Below are positions 16,346 through 41,151 of a stretch of 41,151 nucleotides of DNA, one piece after another. A program made the translations under genes and the position numbers. The notes below the pieces were generated by a model that saw only the letters and a program-made list of their open reading frames with translations, was not told the origin of the DNA and did not search any database. The DNA lies in contig NC_069008.1 in the NCBI RefSeq assembly GCF_001194135.2, forward strand, positions 2,765,959 to 2,807,109, written 5' to 3'. Position 1 is the stretch's first letter; every line of letters starts with the position of its first letter. This DNA is from Octopus bimaculoides. Taxonomy: Eukaryota.

Positions 16346-17629
16346 AGAATAATATTAATAATAATCATAAATTCAAATTACGATGGACGTAAACAAACAA
16401 ACGAAGGTTGCTTTAGAAGCGTTGAGATGTTTTAGAAAGTTAAAAAAGTGATTTTTAAATTCTTAAACACAGGATAATGCTAATATGTTGGTGGCCAGCC
16501 GTCCGCCAACACTTTTTTCTGCAAAATACGGGTAGTTTATCCTGTTCAGGCTATATTATTAGCATTATCTTGCGTTTGAGAATTTAAAAACCATTAATAA
16601 TAATATTAATTTTCTGGTTTAGCTGCATGGTCAGTGATTTTGAGGAGATGAAGTTAGTTAATTACGTCAACCATAGTATTTAATTAGTGCTTAATTTTAA
16701 TAACCGTTTCTAATTTCGACACAAGGACAGTAGTTTTGAAGGGGTGGTTTGTCAAAATCATTGACAAATGGGTACTTTACTGTATTGGCCTCATAAAGAT
16801 AAAATGCAAAGACGACGTTGACAGATATTGAACTCAGAATGTAGCGAGCTGGAATAAATACCACAAGGTTCTTTGTCCAACTCTCCAATGATTTTTATAA
16901 TACACTGCCATTATAACAACAATAACAATAATAACAACAAAATACATAATGATATTTATATACAAATTTTGTTATCTTTATTTATAATGTTCCAGTTAAA
17001 TGATAAAAAACGGATATTACAATTCATACAGAGAAATTAAGGCAAATCCATCTGACATTATAATCAGAGACAACCAGGAAAATAAAAATTAAAACGTCAT
17101 TTAATTGAAGATATCAATTCGACTGCATGGCAATACATTTGAAATAGTAATAGGAAAAAGAGAGATTATTACAATAAAAAGATCTGGAAATAGAGATAAG
17201 CCGAATGTAGGGATTGAAGACAAAAACAATCTCCACAATAAAAAGTACCATCGAATGACTAATATAAGCACAGGTAGATGCATAAACAAAAGCTCCAGGA
17301 CTTATATGTATAACACACACAAAAATAGAAACATAATTATTTCTAAATCTCTCAGAGGGATATTCCGTAACAGTTAGCCAAGCAGCTACTCTGTGTTGAT
17401 AAAGAGGGTAATAACCCAGAAACCAGTCCACAGATGTTGTTTTGTGCTGGATGAGAATTGCTGAACTCCCTGTTCAAAAATAAAAGGACACAGATATCGT
17501 GTTGTATAGCTAACTAGAAACGATGTTTCTTGCGGTTAAACAACAGTAACAATCGTCCCTTCCAGGAGAACCACATTATGTTGGCAAATAGCCTTTACAT
17601 ACAAAAATAGTTATACTACTATTAATAGT

Positions 17630-17960
17630 TGTTTCAAATTTTGGCACAAAGCCAGCAATGTTAGTGGGAGTGGGTTAGCTGGTTAGGTGATTACACGGAC
17701 ATCAGTGTTCAATTTGTATTTAGTTTTTTGACGCTGAAGGACAAAATGCAAAGTTGACCTCAGCAGAATTTGAACTCAGAACATAAAGACGGAAAAAAAT
17801 GACGCCAAGCAATTTGTCCGGCATGCTGACGATTCTGCCAGTTCATCACCTGGTTTCAAATTTTGGCACAAAGCCAGCAGGTTTCAAGGAAGACCCGAGT
17901 TCATTACATCGACCCCAGTACTCAACTGGTACTTATTTTATCGACCTTGGAAAGATGATC
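17630..17960 (-). mobile_element. Two degenerate tandem SINE fragments of the family at 22800-22980 and 40831-41071
   Basis: Contain GCAAAGTTGACCTC..GAATTTGAACTCAGAAC and TACATCGACCCCAGT..CAACTGGTACTTATTT blocks. Confidence 0.6.
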
Positions 17961-18728
17961 ATCACTTTAGCTTTATCATTATTATTGTTATTTTTAACTT
18001 ATTTGTCAAAGTTCTTTCGTCACAGATACTGTGACCTCTTCAGTGACTCTCTCTGCCACGTGTCTCCTCTTGTCCTGTTTATCCTCTTTTGTCCTTCTGC
18101 GGAATGTATTCTATCTGCGCATGTGGTCATGTCTGTAGCTGTGTGTGTGTGTGTATGAGTTTAGTATGTGCGTCCTGTATGTGTGTGTGTGTATGTGGTT
18201 AGTATGCTCACATATGTGTATGCGTGTGTGTGTGTGTATGGGTTTGTATATTATACTGTACATTCTAATAATTTAATAAGTCCCACGGTGCTCAATGTAA
18301 CCTCTGTGCCTAATACATTGTACCTTTCACAACCCAGTAGACTGTACCAAACACAGGGTACCCTAAAAACTGTATATGTCCTGAAGCGCTGTATGCAACA
18401 TCTGTGCCTAATGCATGGTACCTAGGTACAAGTCAGCAGACTGCCAAACACAGGGTACTCTATTTAAGCAGCCAGATGGATTAACTGTAGGAACTCAGAA
18501 TAATTTCTGAAACTATGATTGATAAAGATAATTATTAAAAATCTACCCACCCTCCCATTTATACCCAACCCCGCACCTCTCACTTCTAGTCTCCACACCG
18601 GACGCCCTGTCTTCGCATCACCTCCATCACCACCACATCCATATAAGTGCGATCCCCTCCTTCATGTAGAACGGAGTCGTACTTTAATACCCGCTACACC
18701 ACCCCCACGTCGTTATCGGAAATTTTGA

Positions 18729-18815
18729 CGTTTGTTCTTCTGGTGGGGGGGAGCATCATCTTGTGCGCCGAGACCCTGTTGGGTTTTATCGGCGCCCATT
18801 CATATAGAACAAACG
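18729..18815 (-). promoter_or_regulatory. SECIS element (type 2) in the SELENOP 3' UTR
   Basis: Minus strand: CGTTTGTTCT-AT-ATGA-A-TGGGCGCCGA-T-AAA-ACCC-AACA-GGGT-C-TCGGCGCACA-A-GA-TGATG...AGAACAAACG. AUGA/GA core at 18803-18800 and 18760-18759, helix II 9/10 paired, unpaired AAA, 4-bp apical ministem, 10-bp possible helix I. Confidence 0.9.
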
Positions 18816-20045
18816 GTGGGGGGGGAACTTCCTGATAACAGACGTAGCGTTGGTGGGGGGTAGCAGATGGATAGCCGTGGTGGTGACGAGGGTGATGATA
18901 GCGGAGGAGAAGGGAGAGGTAGAAAATGNNNNNNNNNNNNNNNNNNNNNNNNNNNNNNNNNNNNNNNNNNNNNNNNNNNNNNNNNNNNNNNNNNNNNNNN
19001 NNNNNNNNNNNNNNNNNNNNNNNNNNNNNNNNNNNNNNNNNNNNNNNNNNNNNNNNNNNNNNNNNNNNNNNNNNNNNNNNNNNNNNNNNNNNNNNNNNNN
19101 NNNNNNNNNNNNNNNNNNNNNNNNNNNNNNNNNNNNNNNNNNNNNNNNNNNNNNNNNNNNNNNNNNNNNNNNNNNNNNNNNNNNNNNNNNNNNNNNNNNN
19201 NNNNNNNNNNNNNNNNNNNNNNNNNNNNNNNNNNNNNNNNNNNNNNNNNNNNNNNNNNNNNNNNNNNNNNNNNNNNNNNNNNNNNNNNNNNNNNNNNNNN
19301 NNNNNNNNNNNNNNNNNNNNNNNNNNNNNNNNNNNNNNNNNNNNNNNNNNNNNNNNNNNNNNNNNNNNNNNNNNNNNNNNNNNNNNNNNNNNNNNNNNNN
19401 NNNNNNNNNNNNNNNNNNNNNNNNNNNNNNNNNNNNNNNNNNNNNNNNNNNNNNNNNNNNNNNNNNNNNNNNNNNNNNNNNNNNNNNNNNNNNNNNNNNN
19501 NNNNNNNNNNNNNNNNNNNNNNNNNNNNNNNNNNNNNNNNNNNNNNNNNNNNNNNNNNNNNNNNNNNNNNNNNNNNNNNNNNNNNNNNNNNNNNNNTAGA
19601 TATATATATATATATAGATATATATATACATATATATATATATATTTAAAGAAGATAAGAAAATAGAGAGATAAATGAATAAATAATTATCTATTAATTG
19701 TCTCTCTATTTTCGTATCTTCTTCAAATATATATAAAACCACGGTTTATCTAGTTACCTTGCAGGTGAATATTAATTATAACATTCAACACTTCTTGAAT
19801 AGGTAACTCACTAGTATTTTCATTGGATTTTGTCATCCCTTAAAGAGGTTTGTAACCTTTATTTGAACTTCTATATACATATATATATTTAATCAACTAG
19901 GTCTACTATATATTATGCATTCGTTATCATATACAGTATTCTGTACATCTACGGAATCATGGGTGATTTGTGAACAACAACAACAACAACACCAACAACA
20001 GTAGCATCAATCAGTGCAACCTTGTGCAACCTTTTCAGGAAGCGT

Positions 20046-22672
20046 CTAATCTTCGCTCATATTCGGGATGTTACTGAAGACATATTCAAAGAATTTCTGA
20101 ATCTTGCGAGCCAGCGCCTTATGTTCATTTCTCTTCCGGTCAGCAGGAGCTGGTTTTTGGCATAGCAACCTTCATCATTGCCAGGATATTGGTCAGAAGT
20201 GAGCTGGAGTTGTTCCGACTGTTGATTCCTCTAGCGCTGGTCATTGTCAGATGGTGGACCCAATGGGTGGTCAGGAAGAAGGCGTGACTGAACAGAAGGG
20301 TGGTCAGCTGGTCAGGTCTTTCTTGTTGTCTGAATCTCGCTGCTGATTGTGACTGGTGGAATTGGTCTGGAGTTGTCATAGTCATGGTCAGTCGGACATA
20401 GTGGCCACATGGACCTTTGCAGCCTGACCAACTTCTTTACCTCACTGCCATCCCGCGGACAGTCTGTGTCATTGTCAACTGGTCATCTTGACCTCCCCAT
20501 TCTGACCAACTCCCTTGGGTCATTGTCACACTGCCATACTAGGTCATTGTCAACTGGTCACCTTCACCTCTCCATTCTGACCAACTTCCTTGGATCATTG
20601 TCACACTGCCATACTAGGTCATTGTCAACTGGTCACCTTCACCTCTCCATTCTGACCAGCTCCCTTGGATCATTGTCACACTGNNNNNNNNNNTCACCTC
20701 TCCATTCTGACCAGCTCCCTTGGATCATTGTCACACTGCCATACTAGGTCATTGTCAACTGGTCATCTTGACCTCTCCATTCTGACCAGCTCCCTTGGAT
20801 CATTGTCACATGGTAACACTAGACCACTGTCAGCTTGTTGAATTGACCTTTCCTGCTTCGTCCACACCCTTAAGTCACTGTCATGCCACACCATTAGGTG
20901 TCTGTCAACTGGACAGCTCAGGCAATCCAGTCATGTCTGTTCCATTGGGTCACTGTCAGGTGGAAAGCGTCAGTCGACAGCGACGTATGTTACTGTAGCC
21001 CAAATTCTGTGAGGTTCAGAAATGAGTGGAGTTGCTGCAATTATTGGCTGTGGGTATATTGAGAACCTCTGATGTCACATTGGTCAGGCTGGTGTTGAGG
21101 AGCTCGGGTCAACATCACGTGACTCTACACTTAGTCACGTTGTTATTGCTGCTGCTGATGTTGCTGCATAGCGGCATCAGTGACAACGTTGAGCTGATTT
21201 CGTATTCCGTCTGAGATTGGTCCTTGGCACCATCTTCGTCGCAGTTTTTGTTGTTGTCGGTAGAGGCTGTGTAAGTAACATTGTTGCCATTAGAAGTGGT
21301 GGTGGATGCTGTGATGTTTCTGGTAATGTTGCTGCCGTTGTTTGCAGATGTCATGTTCTTACAGCCATCAAAATCATTGTTGTTGGTGGCGGTGGTAGTG
21401 GTGGTAGCAATAGGTGTAGCCTCGCCTTTGTCACCCTTGATGACAATGTTATTGTTATTGCGATACTGTTGCTGCTGCTGGTTGCTGGAAGACGCTGCAA
21501 TGACATCAGGTAGCTGTGCACCGGTTTCATTTCTGCATACGCAGTACATATGTTTGTAGACTGAATGCAACAAAGCACGGAGTTTACAGTTACACGGCAC
21601 CGGGAGACTTAGTACAACAGTTTCATCTCCATCAAATAACACAGGATCTGTTGTTGTTATCGGTTTTTTTTCCAACGTGTTATTCTTGTTTTTGGCAGCA
21701 GTGCTGGTACCAATATTCTTCACAGTGGCCGCGTCAACATCTGTCTTAGTGTGGTTGCGGTGACGGACACCGCTTTGGACAGTGTCTCGGAGACGGTCGT
21801 CGTGGTCTTGGATGCGATGGTTACGGTTGAGCTGACCGAGAGCTGGGGCCCGGTGGAGAAGGAAGCGACACTGTCACGTCTGAATGATTTTGTAGCGGTC
21901 CTGCTGCAGCTGTGGTGGACATTGGCAAAACGAGTCTGATGCTGTCTTTTGCTGCTGCTTCCGCTGAAGCTTCCCCTCCACTCCCTTCTCCTCTTCTTCA
22001 CCTTGTTGATGATGAGACGGAGGATAATGTTGATGGCGATGAGAATGATGCGGGTAATTGCTGTTATGATGCAACTGTTGTTGCTGATAGTGTCGATGAG
22101 GATCATTATTATTATTGTTATTATTATGAGGATGTTGATTGACGTGCTGGGAGATGTGCTGGCCATGCTGTTGATGATGAGGCGAATGTCGGTTGCCTTT
22201 GCCGTGGCTGCCCTTTCTCCGAGTTTTCTGTTCGGTGTGACAGGAACCAGTGTTGTTACCAGGCATGAAATAACACACCAGCTTCTTGAATGGCTTAACA
22301 GAATGAGACGTCGATGATGATGACGATGACGATGACGACAATGTTGATGAGAAAGAAGAAGAACCAACGGAAGCAGAAAACGGAAACAGTAGCGTATGAT
22401 GCTTGATGAGCCAGTTACTCAAGGTGGACGTTTTTGGATTGTACCTGTACACGTATTTCTTTTGCGGTTTCTTCTTTGGCAGTGACATTGCCGACACCGT
22501 GTACATGCGCCGCACTCAAGCACGGAATTTCGATGTCTGCTGGTAGTTGAATAGGTTGCCTAGCATGCAGTTGCACAAGTTGAAGTAGTACGACATGCAG
22601 ATACCTTTGTGGACGTTGAGCGTGGAAACGGGAGCCTGCGATTGGTTGAAGCGAAACGTCTGACGACCGCAC
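20046..22672 (-). CDS. SELENOP: Selenoprotein P, last coding exon (40 in-frame TGA read as Sec; terminal TAG at 20048-20046)
   Basis: Acceptor ttttacctttacgcag|G TGC GGT. (R)CGRQTFRFNQSQAPVSTLNVHKGICMSYYFNLCNC aligns with vertebrate RCGRLVYHLGLPFSFLTFPYVEEAIKIAYCEKKCGNC. No TAA/TAG in about 875 codons; His-rich region; UQU/UQUPS repeats. The frame shifts across the 10-N gap at 20684-20693, so the gap length is treated as arbitrary. Confidence 0.93.
20470..20812 (-). repeat. 75-bp coding tandem repeat (25 aa, 4 Sec per unit) inside SELENOP
   Basis: Unit TGACAATGACCTAGTATGGCAGTGTGACAATGATCCAAGGRAGYTGGTCAGAATGGAGAGGTSAAGRTGACCAGT = UQUPSMAVUQUSK(G/E)(A/V)GQNGEVK(V/M)TS; about 4.5 visible copies, interrupted by a 10-N gap. 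Confidence 0.92.
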
Positions 22673-22799
22673 CTGCGTAAAGGTAAAAGTGGCGCTAAGT
22701 AGTGCGAGAAATGATAAGAATTGTAGTGCTAGAGGTAGCGACGATAATGGTAACAACAACAACAACAAAAACAAAAATCACAAGGCCTAAAATTTGGAG

Positions 22800-22979
22800 G
22801 AAGAGATTAAGTCGATTACATCGACTGCAGTACATAACTGGTATTTATTTAATCGACCCCCGAAAGGATGAAAGGCAAAGTCGACCTCGGCGGAATTTGA
22901 TCTCAGAATGCAGCGACGGGGGTAAATACTGCTAAGTATTTCGTCCGGTGTGCTAACAATTCTGCCGGCTCGCCACCTT

Positions 22980-22980
<1 letters not shown>
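22800..22980 (-). mobile_element. tRNA-derived SINE in a SELENOP intron
   Basis: Nearly identical to 40890-41060 (AATCGACCCCGAAAGGATGAAAGGCAAAGTCGACCTCGGCGGAATTTGA). Confidence 0.8.
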
Positions 22981-23049
<69 letters not shown>

Positions 23050-23475
23050 GTAATAATAATAATAATAATAATAATAGTAATATTCATAATAAATAATAAT
23101 AATAATAATAATAATNNNNNNNNNNNNNNNNNNNNNNNNNNNNNNNNNNNNNNNNNNNNNNNNNNNNNNNNNNNNNNNNNNNNNNNNNNNNNNNNNNNNN
23201 NNNNNNNNNNNNNNNNNNNNNNNNNNNNNNNNNNNNNNNNNNNNNNNNNNNNNNNNNNNNAAGCATCATAGCCATGTGTTGAGAGGAATTCTTTGGGGTT
23301 TGAATAATTCACCTTTGGAAACATGGGTGTTTCGTTCGACATCCTTAAACAAACCTTATTCAGGGACTTTTTGAGCAGGATGGGCTACTCAACCTGAAGA
23401 AAATTCTAACTGGGCCCCACATGCAAGTTCATGCGCAGAAACAAGGTAAAAGAGGAAAGATAAAAAGTAAATTAC

Positions 23476-23676
23476 CTATCGTAGAGGATGATGTCATTGT
23501 TGGAGCCTCGTAACTTCTTCCATATCCTCCGATGTAGAGAATCTTGGTAGACAGGGATACTTGTCTCCCTTCTCAGCTGATGAAGTTTACGTTTTGCTGA
23601 TGGGAAGAAAGAATTGACGATGCGGAACTTGACAAACTCCCGATTGGTTTGCAGCATGTGATGTATCTTCTCCAGC
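23476..23676 (-). CDS. SELENOP: Selenoprotein P, internal exon of the thioredoxin-like domain (201 bp, phase 2/2)
   Basis: ttccattacaccag|G...GAT AG|gtaatt. LEKIHHMLQTNREFVKFRIVNSFFPSAKRKLHQLRRETSIPVYQDSLHRRIWKKLRGSNNDIILYDR aligns with vertebrate LEDLRVKL..IVVN..HIPVYQQ..VWTLLNGSKDDFLIYDR. Confidence 0.93.
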
Positions 23677-24094
23677 CTGGTGTAATGGAACATTGGCCAA
23701 GGGTTAACAATAAATATTTTAGATATCTATCTGGGTGTATATAGTGCGTGCGTGTAACCACACATACACACACACACACACACGCACACACACACACACA
23801 CACATGCTCACATGTATGTAGAAATAATATTCTTCACCACATCAATATCGCTTTTCTGTAGGAATTAACGTTACTATCGTTTCTAAACCCAGGGCACACA
23901 TACACACATCATAAGAATTCATATACTTCAAGAAAACATGAAAATAATTTGTTTTAGCATGGAGGATCTTGAAGCAGACAAAGCTACAAATAATGTTTTC
24001 TTATGACACAATATTTGCATATATTAGGTTAACTTCTGTTGGAAACTAAGCAACAACAACAACAGCAACAATAATACAATCAAGGTTTACTCAC

Positions 24095-24346
24095 TCAACG
24101 ATGTTCTTTAATCATGGTTTTCAGTTTGCACTGAAGAGGCCAACGACAGTCGGGTGACCTGCAGTGTTGGCCATAGGATTAGCTAGCGCCCCATTGCTCC
24201 AGTTGGGCATGACTTTGCAGTTGCCATTACCCCGGTTCAGCCTTGCCGGTGACACGCCTGTCACGACGACAAGCAAGGCGAGAGTCAGTGTGATGGCCAC
24301 ATTTGAGATGGCTCCTCCTCCACCTCCTCCTCCTCCTCCTCCTCCT
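24095..24346 (-). CDS. SELENOP: Selenoprotein P, first visible coding exon (signal peptide and UxxU motif); start codon hidden in gap 24347-25119
   Basis: G11-AISNVAITLTLALLVVVTGVSPARLNRGNGNCKVMPNWSNGALANPMANTAGHPTVVGLFSAN-U-KP-U-LKNIVE, donor GA|gtgagt. Aligns with human CKQPPAWSIRDQDPMLNSNGSVTVVALLQAS-U-YL-C-ILQASK. TGA at 24123-24121 and 24114-24112. Confidence 0.92.
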
Positions 24347-25119
24347 NNNNNNNNNNNNNNNNNNNNNNNNNNNNNNNNNNNNNNNNNNNNNNNNNNNNNN
24401 NNNNNNNNNNNNNNNNNNNNNNNNNNNNNNNNNNNNNNNNNNNNNNNNNNNNNNNNNNNNNNNNNNNNNNNNNNNNNNNNNNNNNNNNNNNNNNNNNNNN
24501 NNNNNNNNNNNNNNNNNNNNNNNNNNNNNNNNNNNNNNNNNNNNNNNNNNNNNNNNNNNNNNNNNNNNNNNNNNNNNNNNNNNNNNNNNNNNNNNNNNNN
24601 NNNNNNNNNNNNNNNNNNNNNNNNNNNNNNNNNNNNNNNNNNNNNNNNNNNNNNNNNNNNNNNNNNNNNNNNNNNNNNNNNNNNNNNNNNNNNNNNNNNN
24701 NNNNNNNNNNNNNNNNNNNNNNNNNNNNNNNNNNNNNNNNNNNNNNNNNNNNNNNNNNNNNNNNNNNNNNNNNNNNNNNNNNNNNNNNNNNNNNNNNNNN
24801 NNNNNNNNNNNNNNNNNNNNNNNNNNNNNNNNNNNNNNNNNNNNNNNNNNNNNNNNNNNNNNNNNNNNNNNNNNNNNNNNNNNNNNNNNNNNNNNNNNNN
24901 NNNNNNNNNNNNNNNNNNNNNNNNNNNNNNNNNNNNNNNNNNNNNNNNNNNNNNNNNNNNNNNNNNNNNNNNNNNNNNNNNNNNNNNNNNNNNNNNNNNN
25001 NNNNNNNNNNNNNNNNNNNNNNNNNNNNNNNNNNNNNNNNNNNNNNNNNNNNNNNNNNNNNNNNNNNNNNNNNNNNNNNNNNNNNNNNNNNNNNNNNNNN
25101 NNNNNNNNNNNNNNNNNNN

Positions 25120-25918: not shown

Positions 25919-26689
25919 GTCGTCGTCGTCGTCGTCGTCACCGCCGCCGCCATCGTCAACATCAGCGTCGTCGGCGTCGTCGTCATAATCATCAACAACA
26001 ACAACAGCACCACCACTATTTCTGCCACCGACCACACCACTGCCGACTCCAGTGTCGGCCCCACCACCATCATCACCGCCACCGCCAACAACACCAACAC
26101 CGACCCCGCAGTTGCCCATCACTGCGGCAACAACCCGATGGTTCTGGTAATGCTCATCAGGGTACCAGGGAACTTTCATGTAAGTCTGTTGCGAACCCTC
26201 AACTGTCACCGCTGCCATGTTATTACCCGTCATCATTATGGTGTCATTGTTCTTTGCCGTTGATGTAGTAGTAGTAGTAGCAGTAGTAGTAGATATAATA
26301 GTAGTAGTAGATGCAGTAGCAACTGCAGCTGTGGCTGTTGCGGTCACGCTGGCAGTTGCGGTCGTGGGGGCTATGACCAGATGCCGGTTCATCGGCGAGT
26401 CGTCACACGGGGCCAGGTGTAAGGGGGACCAAGCTGACGACGAGTGGAACTGCGTCAGCTGGCCGAGATTGAGCGGTGTGTCTGTCTCCAGAGCTGTGAA
26501 GAACGATGACGACTCGCTGGTGCGGCGCGACGACTGTCGCTCCTCACCTGGAGTGCCGTCTTCCGGGTCTTTGCGCTCATGGTCACTTTCCTTGCCTCCT
26601 TCCGGGTTGGTGACAACGATTGTGGGACCAATCTCTTGCAGGTGTTCTAATAGCGATCCAATGAAGGTATAGCAGTAGTTGTATTCAGC
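25919..26689 (-). CDS. Receptor-type protein tyrosine phosphatase, last visible coding exon (end of D2 plus low-complexity tail; stop hidden in or after gap 25819-25918)
   Basis: Acceptor ttttgcag|GCT GAA TAC; AEYNYCYTFIGSLLEHL matches the terminal EQY.F.Y helix of PTP domains; 257 open codons up to the gap. Confidence 0.8.
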
Positions 26690-27418
26690 CTGCAAAAAAA
26701 AAAGAAAAAAAGATATATATATATATAAGGCGCAGGAGTGGCTGTGTGGTAAGNNNNNNNNNNNNNNNNNNNNNNNNNNNNNNNNNNNNNNNNNNNNNNN
26801 NNNNNNNNNNNNNNNNNNNNNNNNNNNNNNNNNNNNNNNNNNNNNNNNNNNNNNNNNNNNNNNNNNNNNNNNNNNNNNNNNNNNNNNNNNNNNNNNNNNN
26901 NNNNNNNNNNNNNNNNNNNNNNNNNNNNNNNNNNNNNNNNNNNNNNNNNNNNNNNNNNNNNNNNNNNNNNNNNNNNNNNNNNNNNNNNNNNNNNNNNNNN
27001 NNNNNNNNNNNNNNNNNNNNNNNNNNNNNNNNNNNNNNNNNNNNNNNNNNNNNNNNNNNNNNNNNNNNNNNNNNNNNNNNNNNNNNNNNNNNNNNNNNNN
27101 NNNNNNNNNNNNNNNNNNNNNNNNNNNNNNNNNNNNNNNNNNNNNNNNNNNNNNNNNNNNNNNNNNNNNNNNNNNNNNNNNNNNNNNNNNNNNNNNNNNN
27201 NNNNNNNNNNNNNNNNNNNNNNNNNNNNNNNNNNNNNNNNNNNNNNNNNNNNNNNNNNNNNNNNNNNNNNNNNNNNNNNNNNNNNNNNNNNNNNNNNNNN
27301 NNNNNNNNNNNNNNNNNNNNNNNNNNNNNNNNNNNNNNNNNNNNNNNNNNNNNNNNNNNNNNNNNNNNNNNNNNNNNNNNNNNNNNNNNNNNNNNNNNNN
27401 NNNNNNNNNNNNNNNNNN

Positions 27419-27867: not shown

Positions 27868-28094
27868 TCTTAACCACTATGCCATATGTCTGTGGGCATA
27901 AGGCTGGAGGGTATATCAGCCGAAACGTTGTGTTAACAACAAACAAGATGAGGACAAATATCCGTCAAATGTAAATAATGTAAATAATGTAAATAATGTA
28001 CATAATTCCTCATCTCTTAAATATAGAATCATGAAGGTTAGTTTTATTTTTGGTAGTAGGGTAGAAAGGGCACACTGAGTAATAGAAGTCAGCT

Positions 28095-28700
28095 TGTTAG
28101 GGGTCACTTTACTATAGCAGATTGAAAAGGGCACAGTAAATATCACGTTGTTAGGGGTCACTTTACTATAGCAGATTGAAAAGGGCACAGTAAATATCAC
28201 GTTGTTAGGGGTCACTTTACTATAGCAGATTGAAAAGGGCACAGTAAATATCACGTNNNNNNNNNNNNNNNNNNNNNNNNNNNNNNNNNNNNNNNNNNNN
28301 NNNNNNNNNNNNNNNNNNNNNNNNNNNNNNNNNNNNNNNNNNNNNNNNNNNNNNNNNNNNNNNNNNNNNNNNNNNNNNNNNNNNNNNNNNNNNNNNNNNN
28401 NNNNNNNNNNNNNNNNNNNNNNNNNNNNNNNNNNNNNNNNNNNNNNNNNNNNNNNNNNNNNNNNNNNNNNNNNNNNNNNNNNNNNNNNNNNNNNNNNNNN
28501 NNNNNNNNNNNNNNNNNNNNNNNNNNNNNNNNNNNNNNNNNNNNNNNNNNNNNNNNNNNNNNNNNNNNNNNNNNNNNNNNNNNNNNNNCACTTTACTATA
28601 GCAGATTGAAAAGGGCACAGTAAATATCACGTTGTTAGGGGTCACTTTACTATAGCAGATTGAAAAGGGCACAGTAAATATCAGGTTGTTAGGGGTTACT
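28095..28700. repeat. 54-bp tandem minisatellite spanning a gap
   Basis: Unit TTGTTAGGGGTCACTTTACTATAGCAGATTGAAAAGGGCACAGTAAATATCACG present on both sides of gap 28257-28588. Confidence 0.92.
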
Positions 28701-33360: not shown

Positions 33361-34799
33361 GACCTAAATCCAAGGCCTTTGCCAGGGGTGTAGCCAGCCC
33401 ACTTATGCGTATTAGACACTAAACTTCACTTGCGAAGACCTGTTGAGGCAAGGGAAATCGAAATCGAACTAAATTCGACAACTGGCACACATGCCAATGT
33501 CGTCTTCTTCATTGGACACGAAACTCGGCTTGCGAAGACCTGTTGAGGCAGGTGAAGTCGAAATCGTAATGGCATCTGTGCCCAGCGTCGCCTTCCTGGC
33601 ACTTGTGCCAGTGGCACATGTAAAGACATTCAAGCGAGATCATTGCCAGTGCTGCTGGATTGGCTCCTGTGCATGTGGCACGTAAAATACAACATTTTGA
33701 GCATAGCCGTTGCCAGTACCGTCTGACTGGCCTTCGTGCCGGTGGCACGTAAAAGCACCCACTACACTNNNNNNNNNNNNNNNNNNNNNNNNNNNNNNNN
33801 NNNNNNNNNNNNNNNNNNNNNNNNNNNNNNNNNNNNNNNNNNNNNNNNNNNNNNNNNNNNNNNNNNNNNNNNNNNNNNNNNNNNNNNNNNNNNNNNNNNN
33901 NNNNNNNNNNNNNNNNNNNNNNNNNNNNNNNNNNNNNNNNNNNNNNNNNNNNNNNNNNNNNNNNNNNNNNNNNNNNNNNNNNNNNNNNNNNNNNNNNNNN
34001 NNNNNNNNNNNNNNNNNNNNNNNNNNNNNNNNNNNNNNNNNNNNNNNNNNNNNNNNNNNNNNNNNNNNNNNNNNNNNNNNNNNNNNNNNNNNNNNNNNNN
34101 NNNNNNNNNNNNNNNNNNNNNNNNNNNNNNNNNNNNNNNNNNNNNNNNNNNNNNNNNNNNNNNNNNNNNNNNNNNNNNNNNNNNNNNNNNNNNNNNNNNN
34201 NNNNNNNNNNNNNNNNNNNNNNNNNNNNNNNNNNNNNNNNNNNNNNNNNNNNNNNNNNNNNNNNNNNNNNNNNNNNNNNNNNNNNNNNNNNNNNNNNNNN
34301 NNNNNNNNNNNNNNNNNNNNNNNNNNTTAGTACTTAATCTATCGGTCTCTTTTTGCCGAACCGCTAAGTTACGGGGACGTAAACACACCAGCATCGGTTG
34401 TCAAGCGATGTTGGGGAGACAAACACAGACACACACATATATATATATACATATACATATATACGACGTGTTTCTTTCAGTTTCCATCTACCAAATCCAC
34501 TCACAAGGCTTTGGTCAGCCCGAAGCTATAGTAGAAGACCCTTACCCAAGGTGCCACGCAGTGGGACTGAACCCGGAACCATGTGGTTCGTAAGCAAGCT
34601 ACTTACCACACAGCCACTCCTACGCCTGGACAGCTTTGAGTAAAAACAGTGCATGTATGTATGCATACATATCCATGTTGCTGTAAGTATGCACATAGCT
34701 GTGTATCATGTGCATTGCTCAATGTGTGGAGACAAGGAATGGGGTTAATGAGCTGAGAGAAATTTAGCTAATTGTTGCTTTAATTATGCAAATTACTGG

Positions 34800-36271
34800 A
34801 CAGTGAAAACTGTAGTGAAGAAGTGGCTCAAAGAACAGTCAACAGAATTTTACGGGGACAGGGATACATGCTCTCATTCTAAGGTGGAACATTGCTATTG
34901 AGAGAAACGGTGACTATGTTGAGAAGTAGGGATGTGATCCACAGAGGACCAGCTTCATTTTGATGTATGATACATGTTCCTATGTTGGTAATTATACCTG
35001 TCCTAAACAAAATGGCATTACCNNNNNNNNNNNNNNNNNNNNNNNNNNNNNNNNNNNNNNNNNNNNNNNNNNNNNNNNNNNNNNNNNNNNNNNNNNNNNN
35101 NNNNNNNNNNNNNNNNNNNNNNNNNNNNNNNNNNNNNNNNNNNNNNNNNNNNNNNNNNNNNNNNNNNNNNNNNNNNNNNNNNNNNNNNNNNNNNNNNNNN
35201 NNNNNNNNNNNNNNNNNNNNNNNNNNNNNNNNNNNNNNNNNNNNNNNNNNNNNNNNNNNNNNNNNNNNNNNNNNNNNNNNNNNNNNNNNNNNNNNNNNNN
35301 NNNNNNNNNNNNNNNNNNNNNNNNNNNNNNNNNNNNNNNNNNNNNNNNNNNNNNNNNNNNNNNNNNNNNNNNNNNNNNNNNNNNNNNNNNNNNNNNNNNN
35401 NNNNNNNNNNNNNNNNNNNNNNNNNNNNNNNNNNNNNNNNNNNNNNNNNNNNNNNNNNNNNNNNNNNNNNNNNNNNNNNNNNNNNNNNNNNNNNNNNNNN
35501 NNNNNNNNNNNNNNNNNNNNNNNNNNNNNNNNNNNNNNNNNNNNNNNNNNNNNNNNNNNNNNNNNNNNNNNNNNNNNNNNNNNNNNNNNNNNNNNNNNNN
35601 NNNNNNNNNNNNNNNNNNNNNNNNNNNNNNNNNNNNNNNNNNNNNNNNNNNNNNNNNNNNNNNNNNNNNNNNNNNNNNNNNNNNNNNNNNNNNNNNNNNN
35701 NNNNNNNNNNNNNNNNNNNNNNNNNNNNNNNNNNNNNNNNNNNNNNNNNNNNNNNNNNNNNNNNNNNNNNNNNNNNNNNNNNNNNNNNNNNNNNNNNNNN
35801 NNNNNNNNNNNNNNNNNNNNNNNNNNNNNNNNNNNNNNNNNNNNNNNNNNNNNNNNNNNNNNNNNCAGTGAAAACTGTAGTGAAGAAGTGGCTCAAAGAA
35901 CAGTCAACAGAATTTTACGGGGACAGGGATACATGCTCTCATTCTAAGGTGGAACATTGCTATTGAGAGAAACGGTGACTATGTTGAGAAGTAGGGATGT
36001 GATCCACAGAGGACCAGCTTCATTTTGATGTATGATACATGTTCCTGTGTTGGTAATTATCTCAAATAAGTCAAGGGAATTTTGCGGGGGCAGGGATACA
36101 TGCTCTCATTCGAAGGTGGAACATTGCTATTGAGAGACACGGTGGCTATGTTGAGAAGTAGGGATGTGATCCACAGAGGACCAGCTTCATTTTGATGTAT
36201 GATACATGTTCCTATGTTGGTAATTATACCTGTCCTAAACAAAATGGCATTACCTTTTGACTCAGCCTCGT
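34800..36271 (+). mobile_element. Mariner transposon 3' end, present three times (34801-35022, 35866-36058, 36075-36271), ending in a TIR
   Basis: VKTVVKKWLKEQSTEFY..GIHALI.RWNIAIERNGDYVEK* is a mariner C-terminus; terminal TTTTGACTCAGCCTCGT. Confidence 0.85.
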
Positions 36272-36422: not shown

Positions 36423-36554
36423 TCTGGAAAACTTCACATCGTTGAGTAGAACTAAGGTGTTCACCTTGTAGTCGTAAACAAGACGCCAAATGTCACGTAT
36501 GGTGCTCCTCATTGGCCACTGTGTTACGATGTAATTGTTTCGGTTCCAATAACC
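36423..36554 (-). CDS. Receptor-type PTP, D2 exon (132 bp, phase 0/0)
   Basis: ccccag|GGT...AGA|gtaagt; GYWNRNNYIVTQWPMRSTIRDIWRLVYDYKVNTLVLLNDVKFSR matches GY....I.TQ.P...T..DFW..V......IV.L. Confidence 0.93.
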
Positions 36555-38759: not shown

Positions 38760-38796
<37 letters not shown>

Positions 38797-38826
38797 ACAT
38801 GCATGTTTGGTTTTCTCAATACTTAC

Positions 38827-38903
38827 ATCTACGTAGACACCATTAATAAAGTCGCTGTCATCACTTTTGTCATTGCTCAGCAAATATGGACGGGCTCTTT
38901 CGG
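38827..38903 (-). CDS. Receptor-type PTP, D2 exon (77 bp, phase 1/0)
   Basis: ttccacag|CC GAA...GAT|gtaagt; ERARPYLLSNDKSDDSDFINGVYVD matches the R..L......DYINA..VD motif. Confidence 0.93.
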
Positions 38904-39000
38904 CTGTGGAATAAAAGAGAGGAAGAGTTAGAAGGGTAGCCTTCAGCATCATGTGTATGTGTATATGCATGTGAATGTGTGTCTGAGCATGTGTGCATGC

Positions 39001-39036
<36 letters not shown>

Positions 39037-39891: not shown

Positions 39892-39936
<45 letters not shown>

Positions 39937-40282
39937 TACAACAAGCTTCTTTCAGTTTCCGTCAACCAAATCCACTCACAAGACTTTGGTCAGCCCGAGG
40001 CTATAGTAGAAGGCACCTGCCCAAGGTGCCACGCAGTGGGACTGAACCCGGAACCATGTGGTTGGTAAGCAAGCTACTTACCACACAGCCACTCGGAGAG
40101 CAGGCTGCCGTTGCTACAATCATTTCTAGCCACTGTCTAGAGATCTCCATTACTGGCTGACACATACATATGTACTAGATAAGAGAGCAAGGTGTGATGT
40201 GAGGGAGGTTTGGCTGCTGTTTCTAGAGAATCTAGTATCCACATAGAGACTCCTTCTTTTGACCTCTTGGTGGGTAGTTAGT

Positions 40283-40650: not shown

Positions 40651-41151
40651 TACGAAGTCTGATCAATAAGTATCCGGACTGTTGTCATAGTAACAAAGCT
40701 AAAGCACGCAGAGTGAAGCTGCTTGGCAAAGATTGACCTTAAACTCAGCTGTGCATAAACACTAAGTTTTAACGTTCTAGTTCACTTCCACCGTTTACAG
40801 CAGTACTTGGAAGGAAGGTGTGTAGTGTGTTATTTCTTTACTACCCACAAGGGGCTACACACAGAGGGGACAAACAAGGACAAACAAACGGATTAAGTCG
40901 ATTATATCGACCCCAGTGCGTAACTGGTACTTATTTAATCGACCCCGAAAGGATGAAAGGCAAAGTTGACCTCGGCGGAATTTGAACTCAGAACGTAGCG
41001 GCAGACGAAATACTGCTAAGCATTTCGCCCGCCGTGCTAACGTTTCTGCCAGCTCGCTGCCACACTACACCGGTGTGTAGTGTGTGATCGTCGCATTGAC
41101 CATGGCCAGAGAAAGCTGTCATGGTGATACCTGGTCTTTTTTGTGAGACCA
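40651..41151 (+). mobile_element. Mariner element 5' end, interrupted by a SINE
   Basis: Begins TACGAAGTCTGATCAATAAGTATCCGGAC, a mariner-type TIR starting at TA. Confidence 0.6.
40831..41071 (-). mobile_element. tRNA-derived SINE with a 14-bp target-site duplication
   Basis: Flanked by GGTGTGTAGTGTGT at 40817-40830 and 41072-41085; minus-strand B box GAGTTCAAATTCC. Confidence 0.88.

What the first reader, a model, noticed from the sequence alone, without database searches (positions are those of the whole stretch)
18729..24346. Cryptic Selenoprotein P gene with at least 42 UGA-Sec codons, invisible to standard ORF calling
Seen: three exons joined by canonical GT-AG sites give about 1,025 codons whose only internal stops are TGA (2 in the first exon, 40 in the last), closed by TAG at 20048-20046. 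The one frame offset falls across a 10-N gap. The ORF-track pieces 23472-23693, 21874-22515 and 21115-21723 are fragments of this gene, and the last two share a frame. Established: UGA plus a 3' UTR SECIS encodes Sec, and SELENOP is the multi-Sec family (10 Sec in human; as I recall, dozens to over 100 in bivalves). Inference: this is a very selenium-rich secreted transport/storage protein of a probable cephalopod, likely mis-annotated as several short ORFs.
Basis: partly seen in the sequence, partly recalled or inferred. Interest (0 to 1): 0.95.

Follow-up and report, generated by a model that had tools for sequence, protein, structure and literature searches.

The report
Octopus-like selenoprotein P gene, ~42 Sec codons
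This is a real three-exon selenoprotein P gene whose long last exon reads through about 40 to 44 UGA codons as selenocysteine, an impressive but already well-described kind of selenium-carrier gene in molluscs and other aquatic animals.

Summary
On the minus strand, three exons (24345-24095, 23676-23476, 22672-20046) join through GT-AG introns. They give 1,022 readable codons with 42 in-frame TGA, no TAA or TAG, and a closing TAG at 20048-20046.

- **Family:** residues 41-199 hit Pfam SelP_N (E 4.6e-22, 79 bits). The two exon-1 TGAs sit on the two cysteines of a thioredoxin-type CxxC motif, giving UKPU.
- **Sec-rich tail:** it is built from eight 25-codon (75-nt) modules with UQU pairs.
- **10-N gap:** it lies inside one module. 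Every natural resolution restores the frame: fill of 30 nt plus multiples of 75, no gap, or a 45-nt overlap. The true count is therefore 40, 42, or 44 and up.
- **SECIS:** one good type-II SECIS-like hairpin lies downstream at 18811-18750. It was the only descriptor hit in the whole window. Its Rfam score is weak, and no second SECIS was found. One could be hidden in the 668-N gap.
- **5' end:** the start codon is missing, because exon 1 runs into a gap.

Multi-Sec SELENOP with modular C-terminal expansions is published for hundreds of metazoans (46 in oyster, 132 in a bivalve, 162 in lamprey). This is an ordinary member of a known kind. No orthologue or transcript data could be reached with these tools.

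The parts
24095..24345 (-). Exon 1 (5'-incomplete). The frame is open up to the assembly gap at 24347. It encodes a poly-Gly run from a (GGA)n tract, a signal-peptide-like stretch AITLTLALLVVVTGVSPA (about 24312-24244), and the start of the SelP_N domain.
   Evidence: Translation; Pfam SelP_N starts at residue 41; GTGAGT donor at 24094. No in-frame ATG lies upstream of the hydrophobic stretch.
24112..24123 (-). Redox motif U-K-P-U: TGA at 24123-24121 and TGA at 24114-24112.
   Evidence: Both TGAs align with the two Cys of 'NCKPCL' in the thioredoxin-like protein 2m72. They also align with U59 and C62 of human SELENOP.
23677..24094 (-). Intron 1 (GT...AG, 418 nt).
   Evidence: homology is continuous across the junction.
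23476..23676 (-). Exon 2, the central part of the SelP_N domain (LEKIHHMLQ...DIILYD).
22673..23475 (-). Intron 2 (GT...AG). It contains the 145-N gap at 23116-23260, an (ATT)n microsatellite and a SINE-like interspersed repeat at 22790-22995.
   Evidence: no coding sequence is missing.
20046..22672 (-). Exon 3. It holds the end of the SelP_N domain, isolated Sec codons at 22518-22516 (U203) and 21876-21874 (U417), a long low-complexity glycoprotein-like middle region, the Sec-rich tail, and the TAG stop at 20048-20046.
   Evidence: 40 TGA, 0 TAA/TAG; shuffles; 21 N-x-S/T sequons.
22006..22188 (-). His-rich stretch (about residues 313-373; 20 His within residues 301-400).
20049..21119 (-). Sec-rich C-terminal tail from codon 670 to the last sense codon. 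It has 38 in-frame TGA as written, including 15 UxU pairs and one UU.
20379..20958 (-). Eight successive 25-codon (75-nt) modules of the type UQUSKGAGQNGEVKVTSUQUPSMAV. The outer, diverged modules keep the register. The only indel is 3 nt, and TGA alternates with TGG at two Sec positions.
   Evidence: family D15.
20684..20693 (.). 10-N assembly gap inside module 4. This placeholder causes the only apparent frame offset.
   Evidence: exact 45-nt overlap of the flanks; a fill of 30 nt (+75n), 0 nt or -45 nt all keep the frame; spacing of 55 instead of 75.
18750..18811 (-). SECIS-like element, type II. Order of parts: AUGA, an 11-position helix II (10 bp plus one mismatch), an AAAA bulge, a 4-bp mini-helix with a 4-nt loop, then GA. 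A perfect 9-bp outer helix (GUUUGUUCU / AGAACAAAC) flanks it.
   Evidence: Rfam SECIS_1 full-length match of 14.8 bits, below the gathering score of 35. It was the only hit of a strict descriptor in the whole window on both strands, with 0.2 expected.
18683..18688 (-). ATTAAA, a possible polyadenylation signal about 60 nt after the SECIS-like element (inference only).
   Evidence: Read.

Best explanation
This is a functional selenoprotein P (SELENOP) gene of a metazoan, probably a mollusc.

Protein layout:
- A signal-peptide-like stretch, which suggests secretion.
- An N-terminal thioredoxin-like SelP_N domain carrying a U-x-x-U redox motif.
- A His-rich, heavily N-glycosylatable linker with two isolated Sec codons.
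- A C-terminal tail of tandem 25-residue modules rich in U-Q-U pairs.

Proposed mechanism:
- All in-frame UGA codons are redefined as selenocysteine. There are 42 as written, and 40 or 44 and up depending on how the 10-N gap resolves.
- Redefinition is directed by SECIS element(s) in the 3' UTR, which recruit SBP2, eEFSec and Sec-tRNA[Ser]Sec.
- By analogy with oyster and mammalian SELENOP, decoding is inefficient at the first UGA and processive afterwards.
- The product would carry or store selenium in body fluid, and the N-terminal domain would add a redox function.

Shown here: the gene structure, the family membership of the N-terminal domain, the UGA-only reading frame, the modular in-frame tail, and one SECIS-like hairpin downstream.

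Inferred: translation of the full tail, secretion, the transport role, and that the SECIS lies on the same transcript across the 668-N gap.
For: - Pfam SelP_N E 4.6e-22, 79 bits.
- 33% identity to human SELENOP over 159 aa, E 1e-16, continuous across both splice junctions including the shared YDRCGR.
- The exon-1 TGAs fall on the CxxC cysteines of a thioredoxin-like protein.
- 42 TGA and 0 TAA/TAG in 1,022 codons.
- Middle region: 0 TAA/TAG against 9.3 expected. Tail: 38 in-frame TGA against 13.5 expected.
- 24 of 35 TGAs are in frame after de-duplication, P 2e-5.
- Modules of exactly 75 nt, with only a 3-nt indel in the diverged copies.
- The gap is in frame under every natural resolution.
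- His-rich stretch and 21 N-glycosylation sequons.
- A SECIS-like element is the only descriptor hit in 41 kb, on the right strand, downstream of the stop.
- Published family features match: a modular Sec-rich C-terminus, UGA-only stops and downstream SECIS elements in hundreds of metazoan SELENOP genes. Counts are 46 Sec in oyster and 132 in a bivalve.
Against: - The Rfam SECIS_1 score is only 14.8 bits against a gathering score of 35. It appeared only when an 81-nt slice was searched.
- No second SECIS was found, although SELENOP genes normally have two.
- An AATAAA at 19863-19858 lies between the stop codon and the SECIS.
- Codon-usage log-odds in the tail favour the proposed frame only weakly.
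- In the tail the +1 frame also has almost no TAA/TAG, with 1 in 352 codons. Absence of TAA/TAG there is only moderately informative, about 0.1 x 0.055.
- No start codon is visible.
- No transcript, orthologue or protein evidence could be obtained.
Confidence: 0.85

Rival explanations
1. A short SELENOP. The gene encodes the SelP_N domain, possibly with the linker, and translation normally stops at one of the early UGAs (codon 203, 417 or 670). The TGA-rich 75-nt repeat array would then be 3' UTR satellite sequence, not protein.
For: - Codon-usage support for the tail frame is weak.
- The +1 frame of the tail is also nearly free of TAA/TAG.
- Only one weak-scoring SECIS was found.
- Some SELENOP genes lack a Sec-rich tail (amphioxus Bf.SelP_a).
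Against: - The 466 codons after U203 have 0 TAA/TAG against 9.3 expected and can only be reached by reading through UGA. Recoding beyond the N-terminal domain is therefore required anyway.
- TGA triplets in the tail are concentrated in the one frame that continues that ORF: 38 in frame 0 against 12 and 4 in the other two, and 24 of 35 after de-duplication, P 2e-5.
- Diverged modules keep a 25-codon register with only a 3-nt indel.
- The frame stays open for 41 more codons after the last TGA before the TAG.
Confidence: 0.08
2. A decaying or non-functional SELENOP copy (pseudogene) whose TGAs are partly accumulated nonsense mutations.
For: No start codon is visible. No expression data were available. 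The draft assembly has gaps in and around the gene.
Against: - There are no frameshifts and no TAA/TAG in 1,022 codons.
- Both introns have canonical splice sites.
- The TGAs sit at redox-motif cysteine positions and at fixed module positions. They are not scattered at random.
Confidence: 0.03
3. The Sec count of 42 is partly an assembly artefact. The tandem modules are collapsed or duplicated around the 10-N gap, so the true gene has a different number of Sec codons.
For: - The flanks of the gap overlap exactly over 45 nt, so merging them would remove 2 TGA.
- The repeat spacing across the gap is 55 instead of 75, so a 30-nt fill would add 2 TGA, and every extra module would add 4.
- Near-identical 75-nt copies are hard to assemble from short reads.
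Against: This affects only the count (40, 42 or 44+4n). It does not affect the identity or the architecture of the gene, and the frame is preserved in all cases.
Confidence: 0.6

Closest known systems
Mollusc SELENOP, e.g. Pacific oyster SelenoP with 46 UGAs and a bivalve SelenoP with 132 UGAs (Baclaocos et al. 2019, J Mol Biol 431:4381; cited; the paper itself was not held)
   Same: SelP_N domain followed by a long C-terminal region made of expanded Sec-rich modules. UGA is the only in-frame stop type, SECIS lies downstream, and the number of Sec codons is similar to oyster.
   Different: - The N-terminal redox motif here is U-x-x-U, not the usual U-x-x-C (calls UxxC typical).
- Only one SECIS-like element could be found.
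- The modules are 25 residues long and built around U-Q-U pairs.
- Direct sequence comparison with oyster could not be made.
Human/vertebrate SELENOP (10 Sec, two SECIS elements)
   Same: 33% identity over the N-terminal domain, with Sec at the human U59 position and a shared YDRCGR across the exon junction. Both also have a His-rich stretch, UxU pairs in the tail, and a signal-peptide-like stretch at the N-terminus (here incomplete; the start codon is not seen).
   Different: - The second redox residue is Sec instead of Cys.
- The linker is about 470 residues instead of about 100.
- The tail is four times richer in Sec and tandemly modular.
- There is no Pfam SelP_C hit, and the tail alignment is not significant (E 0.066).
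Lamprey SELENOP2 with 139-162 in-frame UGAs (PMC13134290)
   Same: The same argument applies: a modular C-terminal expansion and exclusively UGA-type in-frame stops.
   Different: Lamprey has a CxxU motif, far more Sec codons, two detected SECIS elements, and transcript confirmation. None of the last three is available here.
Selenoprotein L (U-x-x-U diselenide motif; from my own knowledge, Shchedrina et al. 2007)
   Same: Two Sec residues in a thioredoxin-fold CxxC-type motif.
   Different: It belongs to a different family and has no Sec-rich tail. The resemblance is confined to the motif.

Membership tests
Selenoprotein P (SELENOP) | N-terminal thioredoxin-like SelP_N domain (Pfam PF04592) | tested here: met
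   E 4.6e-22, 79 bits against a cut-off of 23.2, residues 41-199 on profile positions 4-166. BLASTP to human SELENOP E 1e-16.
Selenoprotein P (SELENOP) | Sec in the N-terminal redox motif (typically UxxC) | tested here: met
   TGA at 24123-24121 aligns with human U59 and with the first Cys of a CxxC motif. The second position is also TGA, giving UKPU, a variant of the usual UxxC.
Selenoprotein P (SELENOP) | Sec-rich C-terminal region in which UGA is the only in-frame stop type | tested here: met
   38 in-frame TGA and 0 TAA/TAG in 352 tail codons. The enrichment is significant against shuffles and against the other frames. The tail is built of modules.
Selenoprotein P (SELENOP) | SECIS element(s) in the 3' UTR, usually two | tested here: inconclusive
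   One SECIS-like type-II hairpin at 18811-18750. It is a unique descriptor hit but scores only 14.8 bits on Rfam SECIS_1. No second element was found. A 668-N gap lies between the stop codon and the hairpin.
Selenoprotein P (SELENOP) | Secretion signal at the N-terminus | tested here: inconclusive
   A hydrophobic stretch AITLTLALLVVVTGVSPA is present in frame, but the initiator ATG is not in the readable sequence. No signal-peptide predictor was available.
Selenoprotein P (SELENOP) | His-rich stretch between the domains | tested here: met
   20 His in residues 301-400.
Selenoprotein P (SELENOP) | Vertebrate-type C-terminal domain (Pfam SelP_C) | tested here: not met
   No SelP_C hit at E <= 1, and the tail alignment to human gives E 0.066. 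This is not a defining feature outside vertebrates. The tail is described as highly divergent.
Selenoprotein P (SELENOP) | Full-length translation with Sec insertion at the UGAs | not testable with these tools
   Needs RNA-seq, ribosome profiling, 75Se labelling or mass spectrometry.
Selenoprotein P (SELENOP) | Conservation of TGA (or Cys codons) at the same positions in orthologues | not testable with these tools
   The protein and contig collections returned no relatives. No eukaryotic genome collection was available.

The most novel reading that the evidence does not exclude
This could be a previously uncatalogued cephalopod SELENOP with two unusual properties. First, its N-terminal redox centre would be a diselenide-forming U-x-x-U instead of the usual U-x-x-C. 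Second, processive decoding of 40 or more UGAs would be driven by a single SECIS more than 1 kb downstream of the stop codon, instead of the usual pair. That would make it a natural test case for whether one SECIS is enough for processive multi-Sec synthesis.
Probability: 0.12. Interest if true: 0.5.

Novelty: new member of a known kind. Interest (0 to 1): 0.3.

Why it matters
Standard gene callers and ORF tracks break this gene into unrelated short ORFs, so it is a useful example for annotation quality control. It also adds a data point on how selenium-rich carrier proteins grew by tandem module duplication in aquatic animals. The U-x-x-U redox motif is a small variation worth recording. It does not change what is known about Sec decoding, because richer and experimentally validated SELENOP genes already exist.

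Tried and rejected
- **Rfam over 8 kb and over 229 nt** found no SECIS. Only an 81-nt slice gave the weak SECIS_1 match.
- **GUGA hairpin at 19811-19745.** I considered it as a second SECIS and rejected it. It has no SECIS_1 match and a fold z-score of only -1.27.
- **The search for homologous proteins.** The full protein was swamped by low-complexity words, and the N-terminal domain returned nothing.
- **The look-up of encoding contigs** on three window ORFs found nothing on record.
- **A metagenome scan** found no relatives.
- **PDB** holds no SELENOP chain, only a thioredoxin-like active-site match.
- **Codon-usage log-odds for the tail** were too weak to be decisive.
- **Alignment of the linker and tail to the human C-terminal domain** was not significant.
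- **Baclaocos et al. 2019** could not be read. Literature searches found nothing specific on cephalopod SELENOP or on UxxU in SELENOP.
- **The whole-window repeat scan** was dominated by N runs and microsatellites.
- **Taxon of origin** could not be tested.


Full report
**Observation**

The window is gap-ridden, AT-rich, microsatellite-rich eukaryotic DNA with 20 N runs.

- Exon 1 ends ...CGTTGA|GTGAGT at 24095/24094.
- Exon 2 is 23676-23476 and is followed by GTAATT.
- Exon 3 starts at 22672 after a pyrimidine tract and CAG.
- The phase-2 junction codons GA|G and AG|G give NIVE|LEK and LYDR|CGR.
- The frame has 810 codons with 19 TGA before the 10-N gap. After it there are 212 codons with 23 TGA and the terminal TAG at 20048-20046.
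- In total that is 2 TGA in exon 1, 40 in exon 3, and no in-frame TAA or TAG.

**Gaps (tested first, as requested)**

- The 10-N gap at 20684-20693 lies inside a 75-nt tandem module. The last 45 nt before it are identical to the first 45 nt after it. In the intact neighbouring copies exactly 30 nt separate those two points.
- Three resolutions keep the frame: a 30-nt fill (plus any multiple of 75), a zero-length gap, or a 45-nt overlap merge. They give 44+4n, 42 or 40 Sec codons. Only the nominal length of 10 shifts the frame.
- The repeat family spacing is 75, 75, 55, 75, 75 across the gap (D15). This favours the 30-nt fill.
- The 145-N gap lies in intron 2. The alignment to human SELENOP runs without interruption across that junction, so nothing coding is missing.
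- The 668-N gap lies between the stop codon and the SECIS candidate. Continuity there is unknown.
- The gap at 24347 cuts exon 1. The frame is open to the gap, and no in-frame ATG precedes the signal-peptide-like stretch.

**Is it more than chance?**

Dinucleotide-preserving shuffles gave these results.

- Codons 204-669: 0 TAA/TAG against 9.3 expected (none of 5000 shuffles), and 1 TGA against 6.4 expected.
- The tail: 15 and 23 in-frame TGA in its two halves against 5.7 and 7.8 expected (P 4e-4 and below 2e-4).
- Absence of TAA/TAG in the tail is only moderately informative (P about 0.10 and 0.055). The +1 frame there is also nearly free of them.
- After removing the near-identical modules, 24 of 35 TGA triplets are in the coding frame (P 2e-5).
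- Codon-usage log-odds favour the frame only weakly.

**What it is**

- The conceptual protein hits Pfam SelP_N at E 4.6e-22 (79 bits, cut-off 23.2, residues 41-199).
- It aligns to human SELENOP (my recalled sequence, U written as C) at 33% identity over 159 residues, E 1e-16. This includes the shared YDRCGR that spans the exon 2/3 junction.
- The two exon-1 TGAs (24123-24121 and 24114-24112) align with human U59 and C62. They also align with the two cysteines of 'NCKPCL' in a solved thioredoxin-like protein (2m72). The redox motif here is therefore U-K-P-U.
- Downstream come two isolated Sec codons (U203, U417) and a His-rich stretch with 20 His in 100 residues.
- There are 21 N-x-S/T sequons across the protein, most of them in the Ser/Asn/Thr-rich linker.
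- From codon 670 the tail follows. It has eight consecutive 25-codon modules from 20958 to 20379, of the type UQUSKGAGQNGEVKVTSUQUPSMAV. The outer modules have diverged to 81% identity or less but stay in register. The only length change is one codon, and TGA alternates with TGG at two Sec positions.
- A 41-codon Sec-free end precedes the TAG.

**SECIS**

- A descriptor scan of the downstream minus strand found AUGA-N11-AAAA...GA at 18803-18755. Helix II has 10 bp plus one mismatch (-18.7 kcal/mol). There is a 4-bp mini-helix with a 4-nt loop (type II) and a perfect 9-bp outer helix.
- A stricter descriptor run on the whole window and both strands found only this site, with 0.2 hits expected per shuffled window.
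- Rfam SECIS_1 matches it end to end with AUGA, AAA and GA aligned. The score is only 14.8 bits (gathering score 35), and the match appeared only when an 81-nt slice was searched.
- No second SECIS was found. One could lie in the 668-N gap.
- ATTAAA follows the SECIS at 18688-18683. An AATAAA at 19863-19858 precedes it and is a caveat.

**Mechanism (inferred from the family)**

The SECIS in the 3' UTR would redefine the UGA codons as Sec. The secreted product would combine a diselenide or selenol redox domain with a selenium-dense, modular tail for transport or storage. Steps shown and steps inferred are separated in the Best explanation section.

**Comparison and novelty**

[quoted passage not shown] - UxxC is described as the typical N-terminal motif, and lampreys reach 162 UGAs (PMC13134290).
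- Oyster has 46 and a bivalve 132 (PMC8230778).
- The primary paper (Baclaocos et al. 2019) was not held, so I could not check whether this gene is already in its data set. It plausibly is. Searches found nothing specific on cephalopod SELENOP.
- The gene is therefore a regular member of a known kind. It has a minor variant (UxxU) and an unresolved SECIS count.
- No orthologue or transcript evidence could be reached, and the taxon is unverified.

**Verdict**

The exact Sec count is 40, 42 or 44+4n. The 5' end and possibly a second SECIS are hidden in gaps. Interest is modest.

Noticed in passing
window 24284-24302 (-): The only ATG near the start of the signal-peptide-like stretch (24302-24300, context CAAATGT) is out of frame and opens a 5-codon ORF, MWPSH, ending in TGA. 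The in-frame codon that overlaps it is GTG (24300-24298). Removing 2 nt (ATG[TG]GCC) would give a textbook start, MAITLTLALLVVVTGVSPA. So one of four things is true: the real start is in the gap behind a poly-Gly run, there is a 2-nt assembly error 45 nt from the contig end, a near-cognate start is used, or this is a small leader ORF.
   Followed up: partly
window 36435-36554 (-): An exon-like ORF matches the Pfam protein-tyrosine phosphatase domain (Y_phosphatase, E 9.6e-10, profile positions 37-76). A neighbouring ORF at 38761-39036 (-) contains a DFINGVYVD-like stretch but has no Pfam hit. A PTP gene probably lies upstream on the same strand.
   Followed up: partly
window 22790-22995 (-), 40891-41057, 17903-17958, 16795-16861: A short interspersed repeat in intron 2 of the SELENOP gene has an 86%-identical 169-nt copy near the window end and partial copies downstream of the gene. 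It looks SINE-like, but ARAGORN finds no tRNA.
   Followed up: partly
window 19651-19721 (-): A near-perfect AT-rich hairpin lies in the presumed 3' UTR next to the 668-N gap. It gives sub-threshold matches to several miRNA precursor families (best mir-556, 33 bits against a gathering score of 84). This is probably a palindromic repeat and not a miRNA.
   Followed up: no
window 25919-26752 (-): A 278-codon open frame with low-complexity Thr/Ala/Gly/Asp runs lies just upstream of the SELENOP gene between two gaps. It has no Pfam hit. Overlapping open frames exist on the other strand, so it may be compositional.
   Followed up: partly
window 28089-28686: A 54-nt tandem repeat (95-100% identical copies) is interrupted by the gap at 28257-28588. 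On the minus strand it reads as repeated VIFTVPFSICYSKVTPNN units.
   Followed up: no
window 20046-24345 (-), in-frame TGAs: The base after the in-frame TGA is C in 30 of 42 cases, largely because of the recurring TGACAATGAC/T unit.
   Followed up: no
window 34419-34619 / 39894-40094 and 34801-34995 / 35866-36060 / 36033-36227: Dispersed 195-201-nt direct repeats with 84-99% identity (D18 and D20). They were not characterised.
   Followed up: no
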